Translations under genes and position numbers: made by a program
The notes under the pieces: model-generated
Told to the model about the DNA's origin: nothing
Database searches by the model: none
Seen by the model: only the letters and a program-made list of their open reading frames with translations
IMG/VR virus record: IMGVR_UViG_3300034158_000023
Span: 62,001 to 126,000 of that record
DNA: 64,000 nucleotides
Reading direction: 5' to 3' (one strand)
Shown here: one piece after another, positions 15,761 through 60,581 of the stretch
Position numbering within the stretch: the first letter of the stretch is position 1
How the letters are laid out: every line of letters begins with the position of its first letter

Positions 15761-15790
15761 GTGGGAGAGCTACGGCTCTCCCACTATGCC
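15761..15790 (+). terminator. terminator hairpin followed by TATGCC
   Basis: GTGGGAGAGC-TACG-GCTCTCCCAC. Confidence 0.75.
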
Positions 15791-17833: not shown

Positions 17834-18057
17834 TGCCATATAACCACTTTTGGTATCACGTTGGTGTATGTACACTTGCAATCATGGCAGTGCTTATAGC
17901 TATTATGGTTAGCATTGAAGTATATCGATATGGTATTTGTAGTGACCCTGATCGTTATGATAAATGTAAACGAATTAACACTAAACTGTACACGATCGCC
18001 TTAATCTTGTTACTAGTTAATGTTGGTGCACTTATGATAAGTCTTAGCTTAACATAG
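17833..18057 (+). CDS. small two-TM membrane protein
   Basis: 74 aa, two hydrophobic stretches, TAATG overlap. Confidence 0.75.
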   Translation: MPYNHFWYHVGVCTLAIMAVLIAIMVSIEVYRYGICSDPDRYDKCKRINTKLYTIALILLLVNVGALMISLSLT

Positions 18058-18158
18058 CTAAGCAGAAAGACCCCTTCTCAGGGTCTTTCTTTTTTTGCAA
18101 ACAAGGCTAAGCATATATTATCAAAGTAGTATAACACTCACAATAAAAGGTAAACCAC

Positions 18159-49318: not shown

Positions 49319-49340
49319 GAGGAGCTCCTAGGAGCTCCTC
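49319..49340. terminator. bidirectional palindromic terminator
   Basis: GAGGAGCTCCTAGGAGCTCCTC between convergent genes. Confidence 0.75.
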
Positions 49341-50589: not shown

Positions 50590-50613
50590 TATAGGTACCC
50601 CAATTCAGTAAGT

Positions 50614-50624
50614 TACATACGATA
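50614..50624 (-). promoter_or_regulatory. late promoter TATCGTATGTA
   Basis: Identical 11-mer upstream of the - strand gene at 63936-63946; contains phiKZ late TATG core. Confidence 0.65.
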
Positions 50625-50712
50625 CTAACTGGAAAAGATTGTAGATATATATTGTTTTAGTAGTAAGAAAGCATAAAGCTTTCTAAATTTAAAACTATAA
50701 AAGGATTACATC

Positions 50713-51237
50713 ATGAACTTCAAAACAGATATGAACGTTGCTAGCTTACGTGTAAAAGCTCAAGCAGTAAATGAGTACACCGTTAGCATACGCAGCAAAG
50801 CGGTAGATTTGATCTCTGCGCTTTACAACAAAGATCCGGTTGCTGATCTACTCCCATCTCCTGATGATATCCTAGGATTCGTCATAGGCATGGAGCAACG
50901 CGCAATGTGCGTGTATACGGTTCGTGCTGACCTGGAATCAACAGTTGCTTCTGTGCCATTCCTAGTAATATCTGACCAGAAAGTATTAGAGAAAGGTATT
51001 GCAGTAATACAGAGCTATTGCGACATGTTGGAAGGGGAAGCTCATCCCAATCCAATGTTAGATCAAGCGATAGGCGGGTTAGCCTCAACGTTTTTCAAGA
51101 CACTACTTGAAGATGAAAATCTTAGCGTAGCTGACTTGAAAGAAGGGCTGGAGTCACAAGGTCTCCCACAGCACTTCATCACTGCTGTAATGCACAGACT
51201 AAACGTCGTGGTTGCATATTTAGCGGCTAACGCTTAA
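50713..51237 (+). CDS. hypothetical protein
   Basis: 174-aa ORF, ATAAAAGGA leader. Confidence 0.8.
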   Translation: MNFKTDMNVASLRVKAQAVNEYTVSIRSKAVDLISALYNKDPVADLLPSPDDILGFVIGMEQRAMCVYTVRADLESTVASVPFLVISDQKVLEKGIAVIQSYCDMLEGEAHPNPMLDQAIGGLASTFFKTLLEDENLSVADLKEGLESQGLPQHFITAVMHRLNVVVAYLAANA

Positions 51238-51299
51238 TATCTCACATTAGGATGGGGACGTCCCCATCCTTCCTTATTCAGTTCACAGGAGGTTCGGCC

Positions 51300-51833
51300 A
51301 TGGATAAATCTATCCAAGTACTACAACACAATCTTGGCGTTGTAGCTAGACGGTTAGGCGTTAAAGTGCAATTGACTGATGAGTCAGTGGCTAGAGCTGA
51401 CAAGCTCGCTATTGGACATGGTCTCTTTAGTGGTAACCGGAGCACTGCATTTGCTCTGGTAGCACTAAAGGTACTGCAACATAAGTTCGGTGCTAAGTTA
51501 GGCTTCGCTGAGCTTAACATTGTACTGAAGAGCCTCGCAGCTGCGCACGATAAGTGTGTGCTGGGCGATGAAGCTTTCCGCACGGTGGTTATAACTCACA
51601 CCGTCAGCTTAAGTAAGATGCACAGTTTACCCCCTCTAGGGTTGACTGAAGCCATCATGCGAGCTGAGGATATCATTGAGGTGTGTAAGGTTTATCATGT
51701 TGCACGTGCAACAGAAAAGACCCCACCACATAAAGTTGGTGTAAGTTTAGCGCAAGCTATTCTAGCCACCATGCGTCCTAAAGTCCTGGGGTTACAGCCA
51801 GGACGCGTCGATGACGAGTTAGGGTACATGTAA
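51300..51833 (+). CDS. hypothetical protein
   Basis: ATG 51300 after AGGAGG; upstream hairpin 51249-51270. Confidence 0.75.
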   Translation: MDKSIQVLQHNLGVVARRLGVKVQLTDESVARADKLAIGHGLFSGNRSTAFALVALKVLQHKFGAKLGFAELNIVLKSLAAAHDKCVLGDEAFRTVVITHTVSLSKMHSLPPLGLTEAIMRAEDIIEVCKVYHVARATEKTPPHKVGVSLAQAILATMRPKVLGLQPGRVDDELGYM

Positions 51834-51863
51834 AATAACCCCCTCTCAAGGGGTTATTTTTTT
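51834..51863 (+). terminator. intrinsic terminator
   Basis: AATAACCCC..GGGGTTATT plus T tract. Confidence 0.85.
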
Positions 51864-51884
51864 GTGTCTTTTTACAGAGACGGC

Positions 51885-52054
51885 ATAAAAAGCAGACCGA
51901 AGTCTGCTCGTTACGCCAGAGCTCATTCTGGTAAGGCAGTCGTATGACTTAGCGCGATAGTTACGTTATTGGTTTATGCCACTATGGACTACCGACGTAT
52001 CCGCGAATTGTTGCCTCTTAAGGAGCGTGTACTGATACTTACGGAGTAATGTAC
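51885..52054 (-). ncRNA. candidate ~170-nt structured RNA
   Basis: Late-type promoter TAATAGTATG|TAC, consecutive hairpins, own TTCG terminator, no ORF. Confidence 0.65.
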
Positions 52055-52125
52055 ATACTATTATATTAATTTACTCGTGTGCCTAATAGGTTGAGGTATT
52101 GTTTGATTACTTATAGGAGTTAACC

Positions 52126-52440
52126 ATGCATGAGCAAATTGAGTTAGGTCTAGATAGTCAGGCTAGTCAAAACACTACAGACCATTTTATATGTAGTACA
52201 AGCAATGCCCCAGAAGAGATTTATGTTACTACCGAGTACAACGGTAAAGACCCTATCATTGTACATGGCCCCTTAGAGTACCACATGGAAAACGGTAAGG
52301 TAATCGTTAGAATAGGAGAGTGTGTCATAGCTTCTATATATCGAATGCAAACTGTTATTAACTTTAAATTGTTCGGGGGACATAGTGCAGTGTCATTGTT
52401 AAATTTTTTAAGTGAGATAAGGAAAGATAATGATTTATGA
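52126..52440 (+). CDS. hypothetical protein
   Basis: 104-aa ORF, SD AGGAG. Confidence 0.75.
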   Translation: MHEQIELGLDSQASQNTTDHFICSTSNAPEEIYVTTEYNGKDPIIVHGPLEYHMENGKVIVRIGECVIASIYRMQTVINFKLFGGHSAVSLLNFLSEIRKDNDL

Positions 52441-52975
52441 CAGTATGTCAGTAAACCCACAAGGTGACGTATCATTTCATTTAGGTTCTCAGTTAGTAGC
52501 TGTAGCTGGCAGTGCGTATAACCTAAATGACTACGTGATTATCTGTAAGGTGAATGGTAAACTGGAACATCTATATATTCGAGTAGGTGCTGCTACGCAC
52601 AGTGTAGATGAAAAAACAGAAATAGCTAGAGCTATCCTTACTGCGTATCTAACCTATCTAGTGGGCAATGATAAGTTTACCTGTGAGTTTATAACGCAAG
52701 GATTTATTAAGTTAAATGAAGATCCTTTCTCACTGAATCAGCACATTACAATCAATTCTAAATTAATCGCATTAGTTATTAAATCGGATTATAGTAAAGT
52801 CCTTATAACCCCAACCACGGTTGCATTACAATCTACTATCGGTAGTGTCTATATGTTAGACATTATGGATGGTGAGTTAATAAATGCTTTAGGTGTAGAA
52901 CCCCTAGCATTAATAGCTACCGCGTCGTGGTTATGTATGGCTTACGAACAATGGAGAAACTCGTTATGCATTTAA
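52430..52975 (+). CDS. hypothetical protein
   Basis: 181-aa ORF, SD AAGGA, overlaps upstream. Confidence 0.75.
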   Translation: MIYDSMSVNPQGDVSFHLGSQLVAVAGSAYNLNDYVIICKVNGKLEHLYIRVGAATHSVDEKTEIARAILTAYLTYLVGNDKFTCEFITQGFIKLNEDPFSLNQHITINSKLIALVIKSDYSKVLITPTTVALQSTIGSVYMLDIMDGELINALGVEPLALIATASWLCMAYEQWRNSLCI

Positions 52976-54943: not shown

Positions 54944-55026
54944 AATCTACCCTCGATCAAAAATTATTGGGGTTGGTTAATATATGTAAGAATATCTTTT
55001 TTCATAAAACACTAAAGGAAAATATC

Positions 55027-55998
55027 ATGACCCTAGAAAAAGCAGTAGGTACTTTACGCATTTATGGCTGTGGCGGCACTGGTGTAAAACGTGCTCATCC
55101 ATTTCAGAGACAGCCACATAACGAAGGCTTAGCAGACGTCTCCGTTACTTATGTTGATACCAGTATGTCCGACTTTGCAAAGGACATCGATTTAGAGGAC
55201 TGTTTCCTCACTGAAGATACTGACGGTAGCGGTTCTAAACGAAGCGCAAACCCACACATCATTAGCAGCGTGATCCGTCAGGTTCCTGTAAAGTTTGCTC
55301 CAGGTGACGTTAACGTGGTAATTATGTCAGGTAGTGGTGGTAGTGGTTCAGTGATCGGTCCTTTACTTTGTAAAGAGTTGTTGATGCGTGATGCGCCAAC
55401 TATTGCCATCGTGGTGCTCAGTACTGTTAGTCAGTTAGCAATCACGAACTGCTTAGATACCATCAAAACTTTAGCAGGCCAATCACGGTTAGCTAACAAG
55501 CCACTGATTGCTATTTTCCACAACAATGGTGCCAACACCGATATAGACGCTGTAGATGAAGCAATCTACAATCAAATCACAGCGTTGCAAATCCTAGCAA
55601 GTCGATCACATAGGGGTTTAGATACCGCTGACGTAGCTAACGTGTTGAACTACACCAATGTAATTGACTTAGAACCACAGTTGTCTACTATGGACATCGT
55701 TACATCAGTGGAAGAACTCGCTGAAGTGTCATACCCAGTAACTGTATGTACAGTAGCTAAGAAAGCTCCAGACTTGTCGTCTATCGGTATAGAGCACTGC
55801 TGTGATGGTATTATGCAACACACTTACAGCGATGTAGATGAGCTACACTTCGCAACTAGTATCACTGAACTACCTAATGTAGTCAAGATGCTAGAATCGG
55901 CATTACTTAGAGTCAAAGAGCGTACTGGTTCAAGACCTACCACTGTTAAACTGGTAGATGCCAATACACTCCCAGATGACGGTTTGTTTTTCAGCTAG
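55027..55998 (+). CDS. phuZ: PhuZ phage tubulin
   Basis: GCGGTG, VDTS, GSGSKR, SGSGGSGS tubulin signature, acidic DDGLFF tail; ATG 55027 after AAAGGAA. Confidence 0.92.
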   Translation: MTLEKAVGTLRIYGCGGTGVKRAHPFQRQPHNEGLADVSVTYVDTSMSDFAKDIDLEDCFLTEDTDGSGSKRSANPHIISSVIRQVPVKFAPGDVNVVIMSGSGGSGSVIGPLLCKELLMRDAPTIAIVVLSTVSQLAITNCLDTIKTLAGQSRLANKPLIAIFHNNGANTDIDAVDEAIYNQITALQILASRSHRGLDTADVANVLNYTNVIDLEPQLSTMDIVTSVEELAEVSYPVTVCTVAKKAPDLSSIGIEHCCDGIMQHTYSDVDELHFATSITELPNVVKMLESALLRVKERTGSRPTTVKLVDANTLPDDGLFFS

Positions 55999-56421: not shown

Positions 56422-56433
56422 TAGTAATGGTAT

Positions 56434-56511
56434 GTACTGACATGTGGTAGTCGGCACATTCCTTTTATTTAATCTAGCAATTTGCTTAGCCACCTTAGGG
56501 TGGCTTTTTTT
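56434..56511 (+). ncRNA. candidate trans-acting sRNA complementary to the early-gene leader/SD
   Basis: TATG late-type start, 5' hairpin, unpaired ATTCCTTTTATTTAA, terminator. Confidence 0.6.
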
Positions 56512-56686
56512 GCTCTTATTTAACCAGAAGCATTTTAAGCCACTTTTTATAGTTTTGGCTACCTATCTACTAGGTTTCCAATAAAGTTGCTTATGGTGTG
56601 TTATATTTTATTTAAACACCACATATATGAAAGACTATGCACACATATATTATCCTATTGATGGTACTATAATAAAAGGATTATCT

Positions 56687-60344: not shown

Positions 60345-60485
60345 CTCATGGTGAGAGGGTGCTGTATAGACACTTGTCAGAGAGCTTTGTGTTCATAGCG
60401 AGCACAAAGACGGTACGAGTGTCTATATAGGATTTATTTCGTCCACGGTTGTTCTTCTCGTATATCGTAGGGTATGTACGAATAT

Positions 60486-60516
60486 AAGCAACAGGGTTTT
60501 CCTGTTGCTTTTTTTT
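60486..60516 (+). terminator. intrinsic terminator
   Basis: AAGCAACAGG-GTTTT-CCTGTTGCTT plus T tract. Confidence 0.85.
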
Positions 60517-60581
60517 GCCCGTTTTGAATTATAATTTACTATAACCCAGTATAAGTTGTAGGAACATTTGCGGAGTTACAG

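What the first reader, a model, noticed from the sequence alone, without database searches (positions are those of the whole stretch)
51885..52054. Stand-alone ~170-nt structured late RNA on the minus strand
Seen (minus strand): TAATAGTATG|TAC, nearly identical to the context at 56425-56437. Starting at that G, the RNA opens exactly at a hairpin base (GUAC..GUAC). It continues with a CUC/GAG hairpin, a long CGCG..UACGU / ACGUA..CGCG arm with an inner CCA-UAG-UGG loop, AGUC-AUAC-GACU, UUAC-CAGA..UCUGG-CGUAA, and the terminator AGCAGAC-UUCG-GUCUGCU-UUUU-AUGCCG. The ATG at the promoter gives only 5 codons. A separate + terminator insulates it. Inference: an undescribed phage ncRNA (virion- or packaging-associated, protein sponge or anti-defence decoy).
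Basis: partly seen in the sequence, partly recalled or inferred. Interest (0 to 1): 0.8.

Follow-up and report, generated by a model that had tools for sequence, protein, structure and literature searches.

The report
Conserved structured small RNA gene in jumbo phage
The largest gene-free gap of this phiKZ-like jumbo-phage fragment very probably holds a stand-alone gene for a folded RNA of about 168 nt, with its own phage-type promoter and terminator. The fold is kept by compensating mutations in related phages, but what the RNA does is unknown and no transcript has been seen.

Summary
The described features are all present on the minus strand at 52054-51887. The window comes from an uncultivated phiKZ-like (PhuZ-encoding) jumbo phage.

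- **Promoter:** the start matches the phiKZ non-virion RNA polymerase promoter core TATG, with G as +1. Its local extension GTATGTA is enriched in intergenic DNA.
- **Terminator:** the 3' end matches the published phiKZ terminator motif, a hairpin followed by YTTATKYYGT.
- **Conservation:** five lineages of related phages from public assemblies keep a 292-299-nt gap at this spot. All hold a 164-170-nt RNA gene in the same orientation.
- **Structure:** on eight distinct sequences, 95.7% of pair cells are paired. 18 of 46 pairs carry changes on both sides, against 5.4 ± 1.6 in shuffles and 1-2 in slid controls.

Folding energy alone is not significant (z -1.0 to -2.0). No strand-specific reads were available, so transcription is inferred.

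Rfam and tRNA scans found nothing. The central arm is swapped like a cassette between otherwise identical phages.

Verdict: a real, probably functional, undescribed ncRNA family, of the kind already reported as candidates in phiKZ. "Late", "virion-associated", "sponge" and "decoy" all remain untested.

The parts
52051..52075 (-). Promoter. Core TATG at 52057-52054 with G52054 as the predicted +1. Extended local consensus GTATGTAC, with an AT-rich upstream stretch.
   Evidence: Matches the phiKZ nvRNAP promoter, 5'-TATG-3' with G as +1 (PMC4666361). GTATGTA is enriched in intergenic DNA. Bases 52055-52075 are 100% identical in the near relatives L005, L006 and L014, and 86% identical in L002. 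TATGT is kept in L015 and L017.
51887..52054 (-). Predicted RNA, 168 nt, from +1 to the end of the U run.
   Evidence: The covariance model finds exactly one hit per locus and none elsewhere in the 64-kb window. Homologues are 164-170 nt long.
52029..52054 (-). P1, a two-tier 5'-terminal hairpin that starts at +1 (GUAC/GUAC enclosing UACU/AGUA).
   Evidence: There is a compensatory A-U to U-A change in L002. L015 has a different two-tier hairpin, also starting at +1.
52018..52028 (-). Single-stranded linker ACGCUCCUUAA, containing CUCCUUA, which resembles an anti-Shine-Dalgarno sequence.
   Evidence: Nearly invariant in the window-type, T-type and L002 sequences (one change in L002). Replaced by an A-run in L015. 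More complementary to the window's translation start regions than shuffled versions in 200 of 200 trials, but no specific target stands out.
51933..52017 (-). P2, a long-range helix (GAGGC 52017-52013 with GCCUU 51937-51933) that closes a multiloop.
   Evidence: Predicted by MFE folding of L005, L006 and L015 and by RNAalifold. One compensatory change, C-G to U-A, in L015. Weakened in L014 and L002.
51953..52005 (-). Central arm P3-P6: 52005-52001/51957-51953, 51999-51995/51966-51962, 51993-51991/51973-51971 and 51989-51987/51980-51978.
   Evidence: 8 pairs show changes on both sides across the arm types. The arm is exchanged as a cassette between L010 and L011, which have identical flanking genes.
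51938..51949 (-). P7 hairpin, AGUC-loop-GACU.
   Evidence: The stem is invariant while the loop varies. One compensatory change in L017.
51916..51931 (-). P8 hairpin, CCAGA-AUGAGC-UCUGG, followed by the conserved linker CGUAAC.
   Evidence: One of the best-conserved segments across all five lineages. A compensatory A-U to G-C change in L017.
51879..51909 (-). Terminator: 8-bp stem, UUCG loop, then UUUAUGCCGUC.
   Evidence: Matches the phiKZ terminator motif, a hairpin followed by YTTATKYYGT (PMC10914365). Three compensatory pairs. The same motif type occurs at five other gene ends in the window.
51832..51860 (+). Terminator of the upstream plus-strand gene. It is bidirectional, so it can also back up termination of the RNA.
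   Evidence: 11-bp stem followed by a T run. The hairpin is kept with different stem sequences in L002, L006, L015 and L017.

Best explanation
This is an independent gene for a non-coding RNA of about 168 nt on the minus strand.

**Proposed mechanism**
- The phage's own phiKZ-type (non-virion) RNA polymerase starts at G52054 of a TATG promoter.
- It stops at a phiKZ-type terminator (hairpin followed by UUUAUGCCGU) at about 51887.
- The product has a hairpin at its very 5' end and a terminator hairpin at its 3' end. From general knowledge of RNase E- and exonuclease-mediated decay, that should make it a stable RNA.
- Between the two ends lies a multiloop with a long, four-helix central arm and two short hairpins.

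**Proposed function**
- Selection acts on the fold, so the RNA most likely works in trans as a structured RNA that binds a partner. A protein is the most probable partner.
- The invariant 3' module (P7, P8, the CGUAAC linker and the terminator) would be the common core.
- The exchangeable central arm would act as a specificity module.

**Shown versus inferred**
- Shown: the signals, their conservation and the covariation.
- Inferred: transcription itself, its timing, trans action, and the partner.
For: **Phage type and locus**
- PhuZ tubulin, DUF7484, DUF7941 and phiKZ-family PHROGs mark a phiKZ-like phage.
- The element fills the largest intergenic gap of the window: 292 nt in a window that is only 5.9% intergenic.

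**Signals**
- The promoter core TATG with G as +1 is as in phiKZ (PMC4666361).
- GTATGTA falls in intergenic DNA 6 times out of 17, against 1.0 expected.
- It lies upstream of real genes in the correct orientation.
- The terminator fits the published phiKZ motif (PMC10914365), which recurs at gene ends in this window.

**Conservation**
- Five lineages keep the gap, the orientation and an RNA of 164-170 nt: the window type, L014, L002, L015 and L017. Their adjacent 104-aa protein is 43-89% identical to the window's.
- The RNA is retained even though the flanking 174-, 193- and 181-aa genes are hypervariable.

**Structure**
- A covariance model built only from window-type sequences aligned the divergent types with their pairs preserved.
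- On 8 sequences, 95.7% of cells are paired and 18 of 46 pairs show changes on both sides. Shuffles give 5.4 ± 1.6 and slid controls give 1-2.
- The structure conservation index is 0.87-0.97 at 66-75% mean identity.
- The MFE fold of L015 alone reproduces the same architecture.

**Strand and coding**
- There are 21 G·U cells against 5 A·C cells. The T-run and the TATGCCGT tail exist only on the minus strand.
- No ORF is conserved. The ATG of the 26-aa minus-strand ORF is lost in L015.
Against: - **No expression data.** The public runs that hold this DNA are unstranded contigs flagged as probably DNA.
- **Weak thermodynamics.** MFE is not significantly below dinucleotide shuffles (z -1.0 to -2.0).
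- **Few independent lineages.** There are only about five, and the alignments used for pair counts were fitted to the model, which inflates pair statistics.
- **Exceptions.** L014 carries two G-to-A changes that break pairs on the minus strand but would be G·U on the plus strand. L017 shares only the 3' third plus P2, P3 and P7.
- **No partner identified.** The divergently transcribed 104-aa protein has no recognisable RNA-binding fold or family.
- **Polymerase genes not seen.** The phage RNA polymerase genes were not identified among the window ORFs I scanned.
Confidence: 0.55

Rival explanations
1. It is a base-pairing regulatory sRNA. The exposed pyrimidine linker (CUCCUUA, identical to the anti-Shine-Dalgarno core of 16S rRNA) and the CUCC in the 5' hairpin loop would pair with ribosome-binding sites of phage or host mRNAs and block translation.
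For: - The linker is single-stranded in the consensus fold and nearly invariant in the window-type, T-type and L002 sequences.
- It binds the window's 70 translation start regions better than 200 of 200 shuffled versions, by median duplex energy.
- CCUCCU is present in L017, and UCUCCUU and CACCUC occur in unpaired parts of the L020 analogue.
Against: - L015 replaces the linker with an A-run and has no CUCC at all.
- No individual target stands out: the best duplex is -18.4 kcal/mol, and 23.5% of shuffled seeds do as well.
- The most conserved parts are helices and the 3' module, not a seed.
- Two CUCC copies in 168 nt is not unusual: about 0.64 are expected, and by my arithmetic P(two or more) is roughly 0.13.
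Confidence: 0.15
2. It is a cis-acting antisense or insulator unit. Transcription running against the flanking plus-strand operons, or pairing of the RNA with plus-strand read-through transcripts, would separate or tune expression of the downstream 104-aa and structural operon. The fold would be secondary.
For: - The unit sits between two plus-strand genes and is bracketed by terminators for both directions.
- No conserved TATG promoter for the 104-aa gene lies in the 70 nt upstream of it. The plus-strand TATGs at 51943, 51975 and 51983 are lost in T-type arms. The operon may therefore depend on read-through across the element.
Against: - Compensatory changes in about 18 pairs, and an arm that changes sequence while keeping its helices, indicate selection on RNA structure and not merely on being antisense.
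- The upstream plus-strand terminator is strong: an 11-bp stem followed by a T7 run.
Confidence: 0.12
3. The structure belongs to the plus strand. It would be a long structured 5' leader (riboregulator) of the 104-aa gene.
For: - Watson-Crick covariation is strand-neutral, and the plus strand folds to -47.9 kcal/mol.
- The two pair-breaking changes in L014 would be G·U on the plus strand.
- The leader at 52076-52125 is well conserved.
Against: - There are 21 G·U cells against 5 A·C cells, so 95.7% of cells pair on the minus strand against 91.1% on the plus strand.
- The plus-strand z-score is only -1.13.
- A plus-strand terminator lies immediately upstream, and no conserved plus-strand promoter lies between it and the element.
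- The terminator tail and the promoter are readable only on the minus strand.
Confidence: 0.05
4. It is a virion- or packaging-associated RNA, like the phi29 pRNA. This is one of the reader's suggestions.
For: - Its size (168 nt) is similar to that of phi29 pRNA (174 nt, from my own knowledge).
- The gene lies about 3 kb from the large terminase gene and among virion protein genes.
Against: - There is no match to any Rfam family at E-values up to 10.
- phiKZ-like phages have a terminase and portal system with no known RNA component (general knowledge).
- Nothing in the sequence speaks to packaging.
Confidence: 0.03
5. It is not an RNA gene at all. It would be a conserved DNA-level element, or leftover terminators and promoters with chance hairpins.
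For: - MFE is not significantly better than shuffles.
- No transcript evidence exists.
- TATG is frequent: 594 copies in the window.
Against: - Covariation far exceeds the shuffled and slid controls.
- Length and orientation are constant across lineages whose flanking genes are replaced.
- The promoter and terminator match experimentally defined phiKZ signals.
Confidence: 0.07

Closest known systems
phiKZ short intergenic and 5'UTR-derived ncRNA candidates (ONT-cappable-seq: 141-nt RNA of TU237, 71-nt RNA at T102, 17 candidates; Grad-seq: 5'UTR_gp40 and 3'UTR_PHIKZ298). Sources: PMC10914365, PMC8545117.
   Same: - The phage family is the same.
- Both are short structured RNAs of 70-200 nt, delimited by a phage-polymerase start site and the conserved hairpin+TTATKYYGT terminator.
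- Both are conserved among close relatives.
- Function is unknown in both cases.
   Different: - There is no sequence or covariance-model similarity. The model finds nothing in the phiKZ PhuZ region.
- Most of the phiKZ candidates (17) lie upstream of, and co-directional with, a gene, as premature-termination products.
- This one points away from the adjacent gene and into the 3' end of a convergent gene, so it is truly stand-alone.
- Here the support is covariation. In phiKZ the support is transcript mapping.
phi29-family prohead/packaging RNA (pRNA)
   Same: It is a phage-encoded, structured, non-coding RNA of about 170 nt with modular helices.
   Different: - The phage group is unrelated.
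- No Rfam match was found.
- There is no evidence of virion association.
- phiKZ-like packaging is not known to use an RNA.
Bacterial trans-acting sRNAs with C/U-rich seeds that pair with ribosome-binding sites (for example the RsaE and RNAIII types; my own knowledge)
   Same: - An exposed CUCC(UU) stretch in a loop and in a linker.
- A Rho-independent-type terminator at the 3' end.
- An own promoter.
   Different: - The seed is not conserved in L015.
- The RNA is much more structured than typical sRNAs.
- No target was found.
Stable small RNAs of unknown function in phage T4 (species 1 and 2, also called RNA C and D; my own knowledge)
   Same: They are phage-encoded stable structured RNAs of about 140 nt with no assigned function.
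   Different: - The T4 RNAs are processed from the tRNA cluster transcript.
- Here there are no tRNAs in the window, and the RNA has its own promoter and terminator.

Membership tests
phiKZ-type nvRNAP (TATG) promoter | 5'-TATG-3' with the G as the transcription start | tested here: met
   TATG lies at 52057-52054 on the minus strand. TATG is kept in all five lineages. The motif definition comes from PMC4666361.
phiKZ-type nvRNAP (TATG) promoter | Experimentally mapped start site or dependence on nvRNAP | not testable with these tools
   Only unstranded contigs were available.
phiKZ-type nvRNAP (TATG) promoter | Late temporal class | tested here: inconclusive
   GTATGTA-type sites also precede the DNA ligase and DNA polymerase genes, as well as a structural-like gene. 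No time-course data exist.
phiKZ-type intrinsic terminator | GC-rich hairpin followed by YTTATKYYGT (PMC10914365) | tested here: met
   An 8-bp stem followed by TTTTATGCCGTC. The same type occurs at 15785, 22036, 25692, 49341 and 54080.
Any Rfam 15 family (including pRNA, 6S, Y-RNA-like, tmRNA, riboswitches) | Covariance-model match | tested here: not met
   There were 0 hits at gathering score in the whole window. At E-values up to 10, the only hits overlap the terminators, not the body of the RNA.
tRNA / tmRNA | ARAGORN detection | tested here: not met
   0 genes were found in the window.
5'UTR-derived ncRNA by premature termination (phiKZ class) | A co-directional gene directly downstream that shares the start site | tested here: not met
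   Downstream on the minus strand lie the 3' ends of two plus-strand genes. The next minus-strand gene (413 aa) is 1.3 kb away and has its own TATG promoter. The feature is met only by the non-homologous positional analogue in L020.
Structured ncRNA in general | Base pairs maintained by compensatory substitutions beyond controls | tested here: met
   18 of 46 pairs show changes on both sides, against 5.4 ± 1.6 in shuffles and 1-2 in slid controls. Caveat: only about five lineages, and the alignment was fitted to the model.
Structured ncRNA in general | Folding energy below dinucleotide shuffles | tested here: inconclusive
   z ranges from -1.0 to -2.0. Between 4% and 16% of shuffles fold as well.
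Small protein gene | A conserved ORF | tested here: not met
   Only ORFs of 23-27 aa are present. Their starts or frames are lost in the T-type arms and in L015.

The most novel reading that the evidence does not exclude
This is a new class of modular, structured RNA in nucleus-forming jumbo phages. The conserved 3' core would dock on a phage or host protein. The cassette-like, recombining central arm would be a rapidly evolving specificity determinant, for example a decoy or inhibitor aimed at variable host defences, or the RNA subunit of a phage ribonucleoprotein.
Probability: 0.15. Interest if true: 0.8.

Novelty: new member of a known kind. Interest (0 to 1): 0.5.

Why it matters
Nucleus-forming jumbo phages separate transcription from translation. 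They are known to make short non-coding RNAs, but none has an assigned function.

This locus offers a candidate RNA gene with several useful properties:
- It has clear boundaries.
- Its fold is supported by covariation.
- It shows a natural arm-swap polymorphism between otherwise identical phages.

Together these make a ready-made genetic handle for asking what such RNAs do. It also shows that the phiKZ promoter core (TATG) and terminator motif (hairpin + TTATGCCGT) hold in a very distant, uncultivated relative. That helps annotate transcription units in metagenomic jumbo phages.

Tried and rejected
- **DNA similarity to isolates.** megablast and blastn of the locus against 50,697 phage records found no match.
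- **Known RNA families.** The Rfam gathering and E-value scans and ARAGORN found nothing on the element.
- **Public collections.** Exact-pattern scans of the viral, metagenome (two scans) and genome collections found only the window's own contig.
- **Read evidence.** The look-up of sequencing runs and read laying returned many near-identical relatives, but only as unstranded contigs with the RNA-labelled runs flagged as probably DNA. This gave no transcript evidence.
- **Distant relatives.** The covariance model found no hit in the phiKZ and Xanthomonas phage RTH11 PhuZ regions, or in the distant relative L020.
- **The 104-aa neighbour as a possible RNA-binding partner.** Nothing informative came from Pfam, PHROGs, ESM Atlas, or an AlphaFold model (pLDDT 73.5) searched against PDB and BFVD. 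The best E-values were 0.65 and 0.06.
- **Target search for the anti-SD-like linker.** It showed a general bias towards ribosome-binding sites but no specific target.
- **Small-protein reading.** Rejected.
Rejected in favour of P2 and P5/P6.

Full report
**What the window is.** The 64-kb window is part of a 215-kb IMG/VR contig from a peat metagenome.
- It encodes a PhuZ tubulin (54967-55998), a tail sheath and a large terminase. It also carries several protein families typical of phiKZ-like phages (phrog_2921, DUF7484, DUF7941).
- It is therefore a nucleus-forming-type (Chimalliviridae-like) jumbo phage.
- It is far from any isolate. PhuZ is under 35% identical to the best phage record, and the locus has no blastn match among 50,697 phage genomes.

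**The locus.** The finding fills the gap between two plus-strand genes, 51252-51833 and 52126-52440 (104 aa, preceded by AGGAG).
- At 292 nt this is the largest intergenic gap in a window that is only 5.9% intergenic.
- No ORF longer than 27 codons lies in it.

**Signals.**
- The minus strand reads TAATAGTATG|TAC, with the G at 52054.
- In phiKZ, the non-virion RNA polymerase recognises 5'-TATG-3' and starts at the G (PMC4666361, PMC12809450).
- In this window the extended form GTATGTA occurs 17 times. Six copies are intergenic, against 1.0 expected.
- It lies upstream of genes in the correct orientation: the DNA ligase operon, the DNA polymerase gene, the 413-aa gene and a 354-aa gene.
- The promoter type is therefore credible, but the label "late" is not secured.
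- The 3' end is an 8-bp hairpin with a UUCG loop followed by UUUAUGCCGUC.
- This fits the terminator motif found at 61 phiKZ termination sites, a hairpin followed by YTTATKYYGT (PMC10914365).
- The same hairpin+TATGCCGT type closes five other transcription units in the window.
- The separate plus-strand terminator at 51832-51860 is real and bidirectional.

**Relatives.** Public runs from wastewater, biofilm, food, freshwater and other samples hold 97-99% identical DNA. Through the neighbouring proteins I fetched the following loci:

| Locus | How it relates to the window |
|---|---|
| L004-L012 | Near-identical |
| L014 | 104-aa protein 89% identical |
| L002 | 104-aa protein 67% identical |
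| L015 / L016 | 104-aa protein about 50% identical |
| L017 / L023 | 104-aa protein 43% identical |

- All five lineages keep a gap of 291-299 nt in front of the 104-aa gene.
- All have a TATG promoter, an RNA of 164-170 nt and the same terminator type on the opposite strand.
- The flanking 174-, 193- and 181-aa genes are replaced by alleles only 18-69% identical, even between phages that are otherwise 96-99% identical.
- The RNA gene is thus a stable element in a highly mosaic neighbourhood.

**Structure.**
- The comparative evidence is much stronger. I built a covariance model from the three window-type sequences only, using the MFE fold of L005 as the structure.
- It aligned the divergent sequences with their pairs preserved.
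- With eight distinct sequences, 95.7% of pair cells are standard pairs. 18 of 46 pairs carry changes on both sides, against 5.4 ± 1.6 in column shuffles and 1-2 when partners are slid.
- The structure conservation index is 0.87-0.97 at 66-75% identity.
- L015, folded on its own, gives the same architecture.
- The fold consists of:
  - a two-tier hairpin starting at +1;
  - an 11-nt linker;
  - a long-range helix (GAGGC/GCCUU) closing a multiloop;
  - inside that multiloop, a four-helix central arm and a small hairpin;
  - then a five-pair hairpin, the linker CGUAAC and the terminator.
The outer UUAC/GUAA has no covariation and competes with the long-range helix.
- Caveats: there are only about five independent lineages, the alignments were fitted to the model, L014 has two uncompensated G-to-A changes, and L017 has a different central region.

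**Strand.** Covariation is strand-neutral, but several observations favour the minus strand.
- The minus-strand fold contains 21 G·U cells, which would be A·C mismatches on the plus strand. Only 5 cells go the other way.
- The promoter, the T-run and the TATGCCGT tail are all minus-strand features.
- The plus-strand TATGs inside the element are lost in the alternative arm type.

**Arm exchange.** The central arm exists in at least three versions: window-type, T-type (L002, L011, L014) and the L017 type.
- L010 and L011 have identical flanking genes but different arms.
- So a tract of about 65 nt inside the RNA has been exchanged by recombination with its helices preserved.
- This suggests a modular, fast-evolving part attached to a constant 3' core.

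**Function.** Nothing identifies the function directly.
- The linker CUCCUUA equals the anti-Shine-Dalgarno core and is, as a class, complementary to the phage's ribosome-binding sites. However, it is absent from L015 and no specific target emerged.
- The divergently transcribed 104-aa protein co-occurs with the RNA, but it has no recognisable fold or family.
- A more distant relative, L020 (DUF7484 41% identical), lacks both the 104-aa gene and a model hit.
- It does have, at the corresponding place, an unrelated 123-nt unit: TATG, a long hairpin and a phiKZ-type terminator.
- That unit lies directly upstream of, and co-directional with, the homologue of the window's 413-aa gene.
- This hints that the window's two small plus-strand genes were inserted between an ancestral RNA unit and that gene.
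- My preferred reading is a stable, trans-acting structured RNA with a protein partner. The rivals are a base-pairing sRNA, a cis antisense or insulator unit, and a plus-strand leader.

**What is known.** phiKZ itself makes short intergenic and 5'UTR-derived RNAs bounded by the same kinds of signals, and none has an assigned function (PMC10914365, PMC8545117, PMC13282480).
- The present RNA matches none of them, nor any Rfam family.
- It is a new family within a known kind of element.
- It differs by being truly stand-alone and by having covariation support plus a natural arm polymorphism.

**Limits.** No transcript has been shown. The single read-laying run returned only unstranded assembler contigs, and the RNA-labelled runs were flagged as probably DNA. 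Those contigs did show two things:
- The element carries fewer differences than the neighbouring gene: 2 substitutions in 292 nt against 20 in 657 nt in run X4.
- Homology to some relatives breaks exactly at the plus-strand terminator.

Noticed in passing
window 56425-56512 (+): A second GTATGTAC promoter-like site sits just after the stop of the 137-aa gene. About 55 nt further on is a terminator hairpin (56488-56505) with a T7 run, upstream of the 134-aa gene at 56627. This predicts a short leader RNA of about 80 nt, like the phiKZ 5'UTR-derived RNAs. The intergenic region is 91% identical in L014.
   Followed up: partly
window 60473-60518 (+): A GTATGTAC promoter-like site is followed within 13 nt by an 11-bp terminator hairpin and a T8 run, about 70 nt upstream of the DNA polymerase gene (60582). 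This looks like a promoter-proximal terminator or attenuator arrangement.
   Followed up: no
window 15785, 22036, 25692, 49341 (+); 54080, 51887 (-): The phiKZ-type terminator tail (hairpin followed by TATGCCGT) itself contains the promoter core TATG. At 15785, 22036 and 25692 it lies 31-71 nt upstream of the next gene. Terminators may therefore double as re-initiation sites. The hairpin at about 49320-49340 carries TATG on both strands, making it a bidirectional unit between convergent genes.
   Followed up: partly
window 50713-51833 and 52430-52975; loci L002, L005, L006, L014: The 174-, 193- and 181-aa genes next to the RNA exist as very divergent alleles (18-69% amino-acid identity) in phages that are otherwise 96-99% identical. 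This is a local hypervariable region among virion-protein genes. None of the three has a family assignment.
   Followed up: partly
window about 50600-50710; L004, L005, L006, L014 contig ends: Four independent assemblies (contigs of 25-65 kb) end within a few dozen bases of the same point, in the divergent intergenic region between the 413-aa and 174-aa genes. Run X4 also shows loose ends there. The cause is probably strain variation breaking the assemblies, but a genome end was not excluded.
   Followed up: no
L020 6347-6490 (+): A distant relative has, at the corresponding position, an unrelated unit of 123-144 nt: TATG, a 19-pair interrupted hairpin and a phiKZ-type terminator. It lies directly upstream of the homologue of the window's 413-aa gene. 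Its unpaired stretches contain UCUCCUU and CACCUC.
   Followed up: partly
window 17866-18095 (+): A GTATGTAC promoter-like site is followed by a hydrophobic ORF of about 58 codons (start 17884) and a terminator (about 18068-18095). This is a compact stand-alone unit for a small membrane-like protein.
   Followed up: no
L019 (Xanthomonas phage RTH11) 2900-2985: The 249-nt gap between two plus-strand genes holds a bidirectional phiKZ-type terminator. On the opposite strand there is a GTATGTA site about 45 nt before it. This arrangement is similar but much shorter, and it is not homologous.
   Followed up: no
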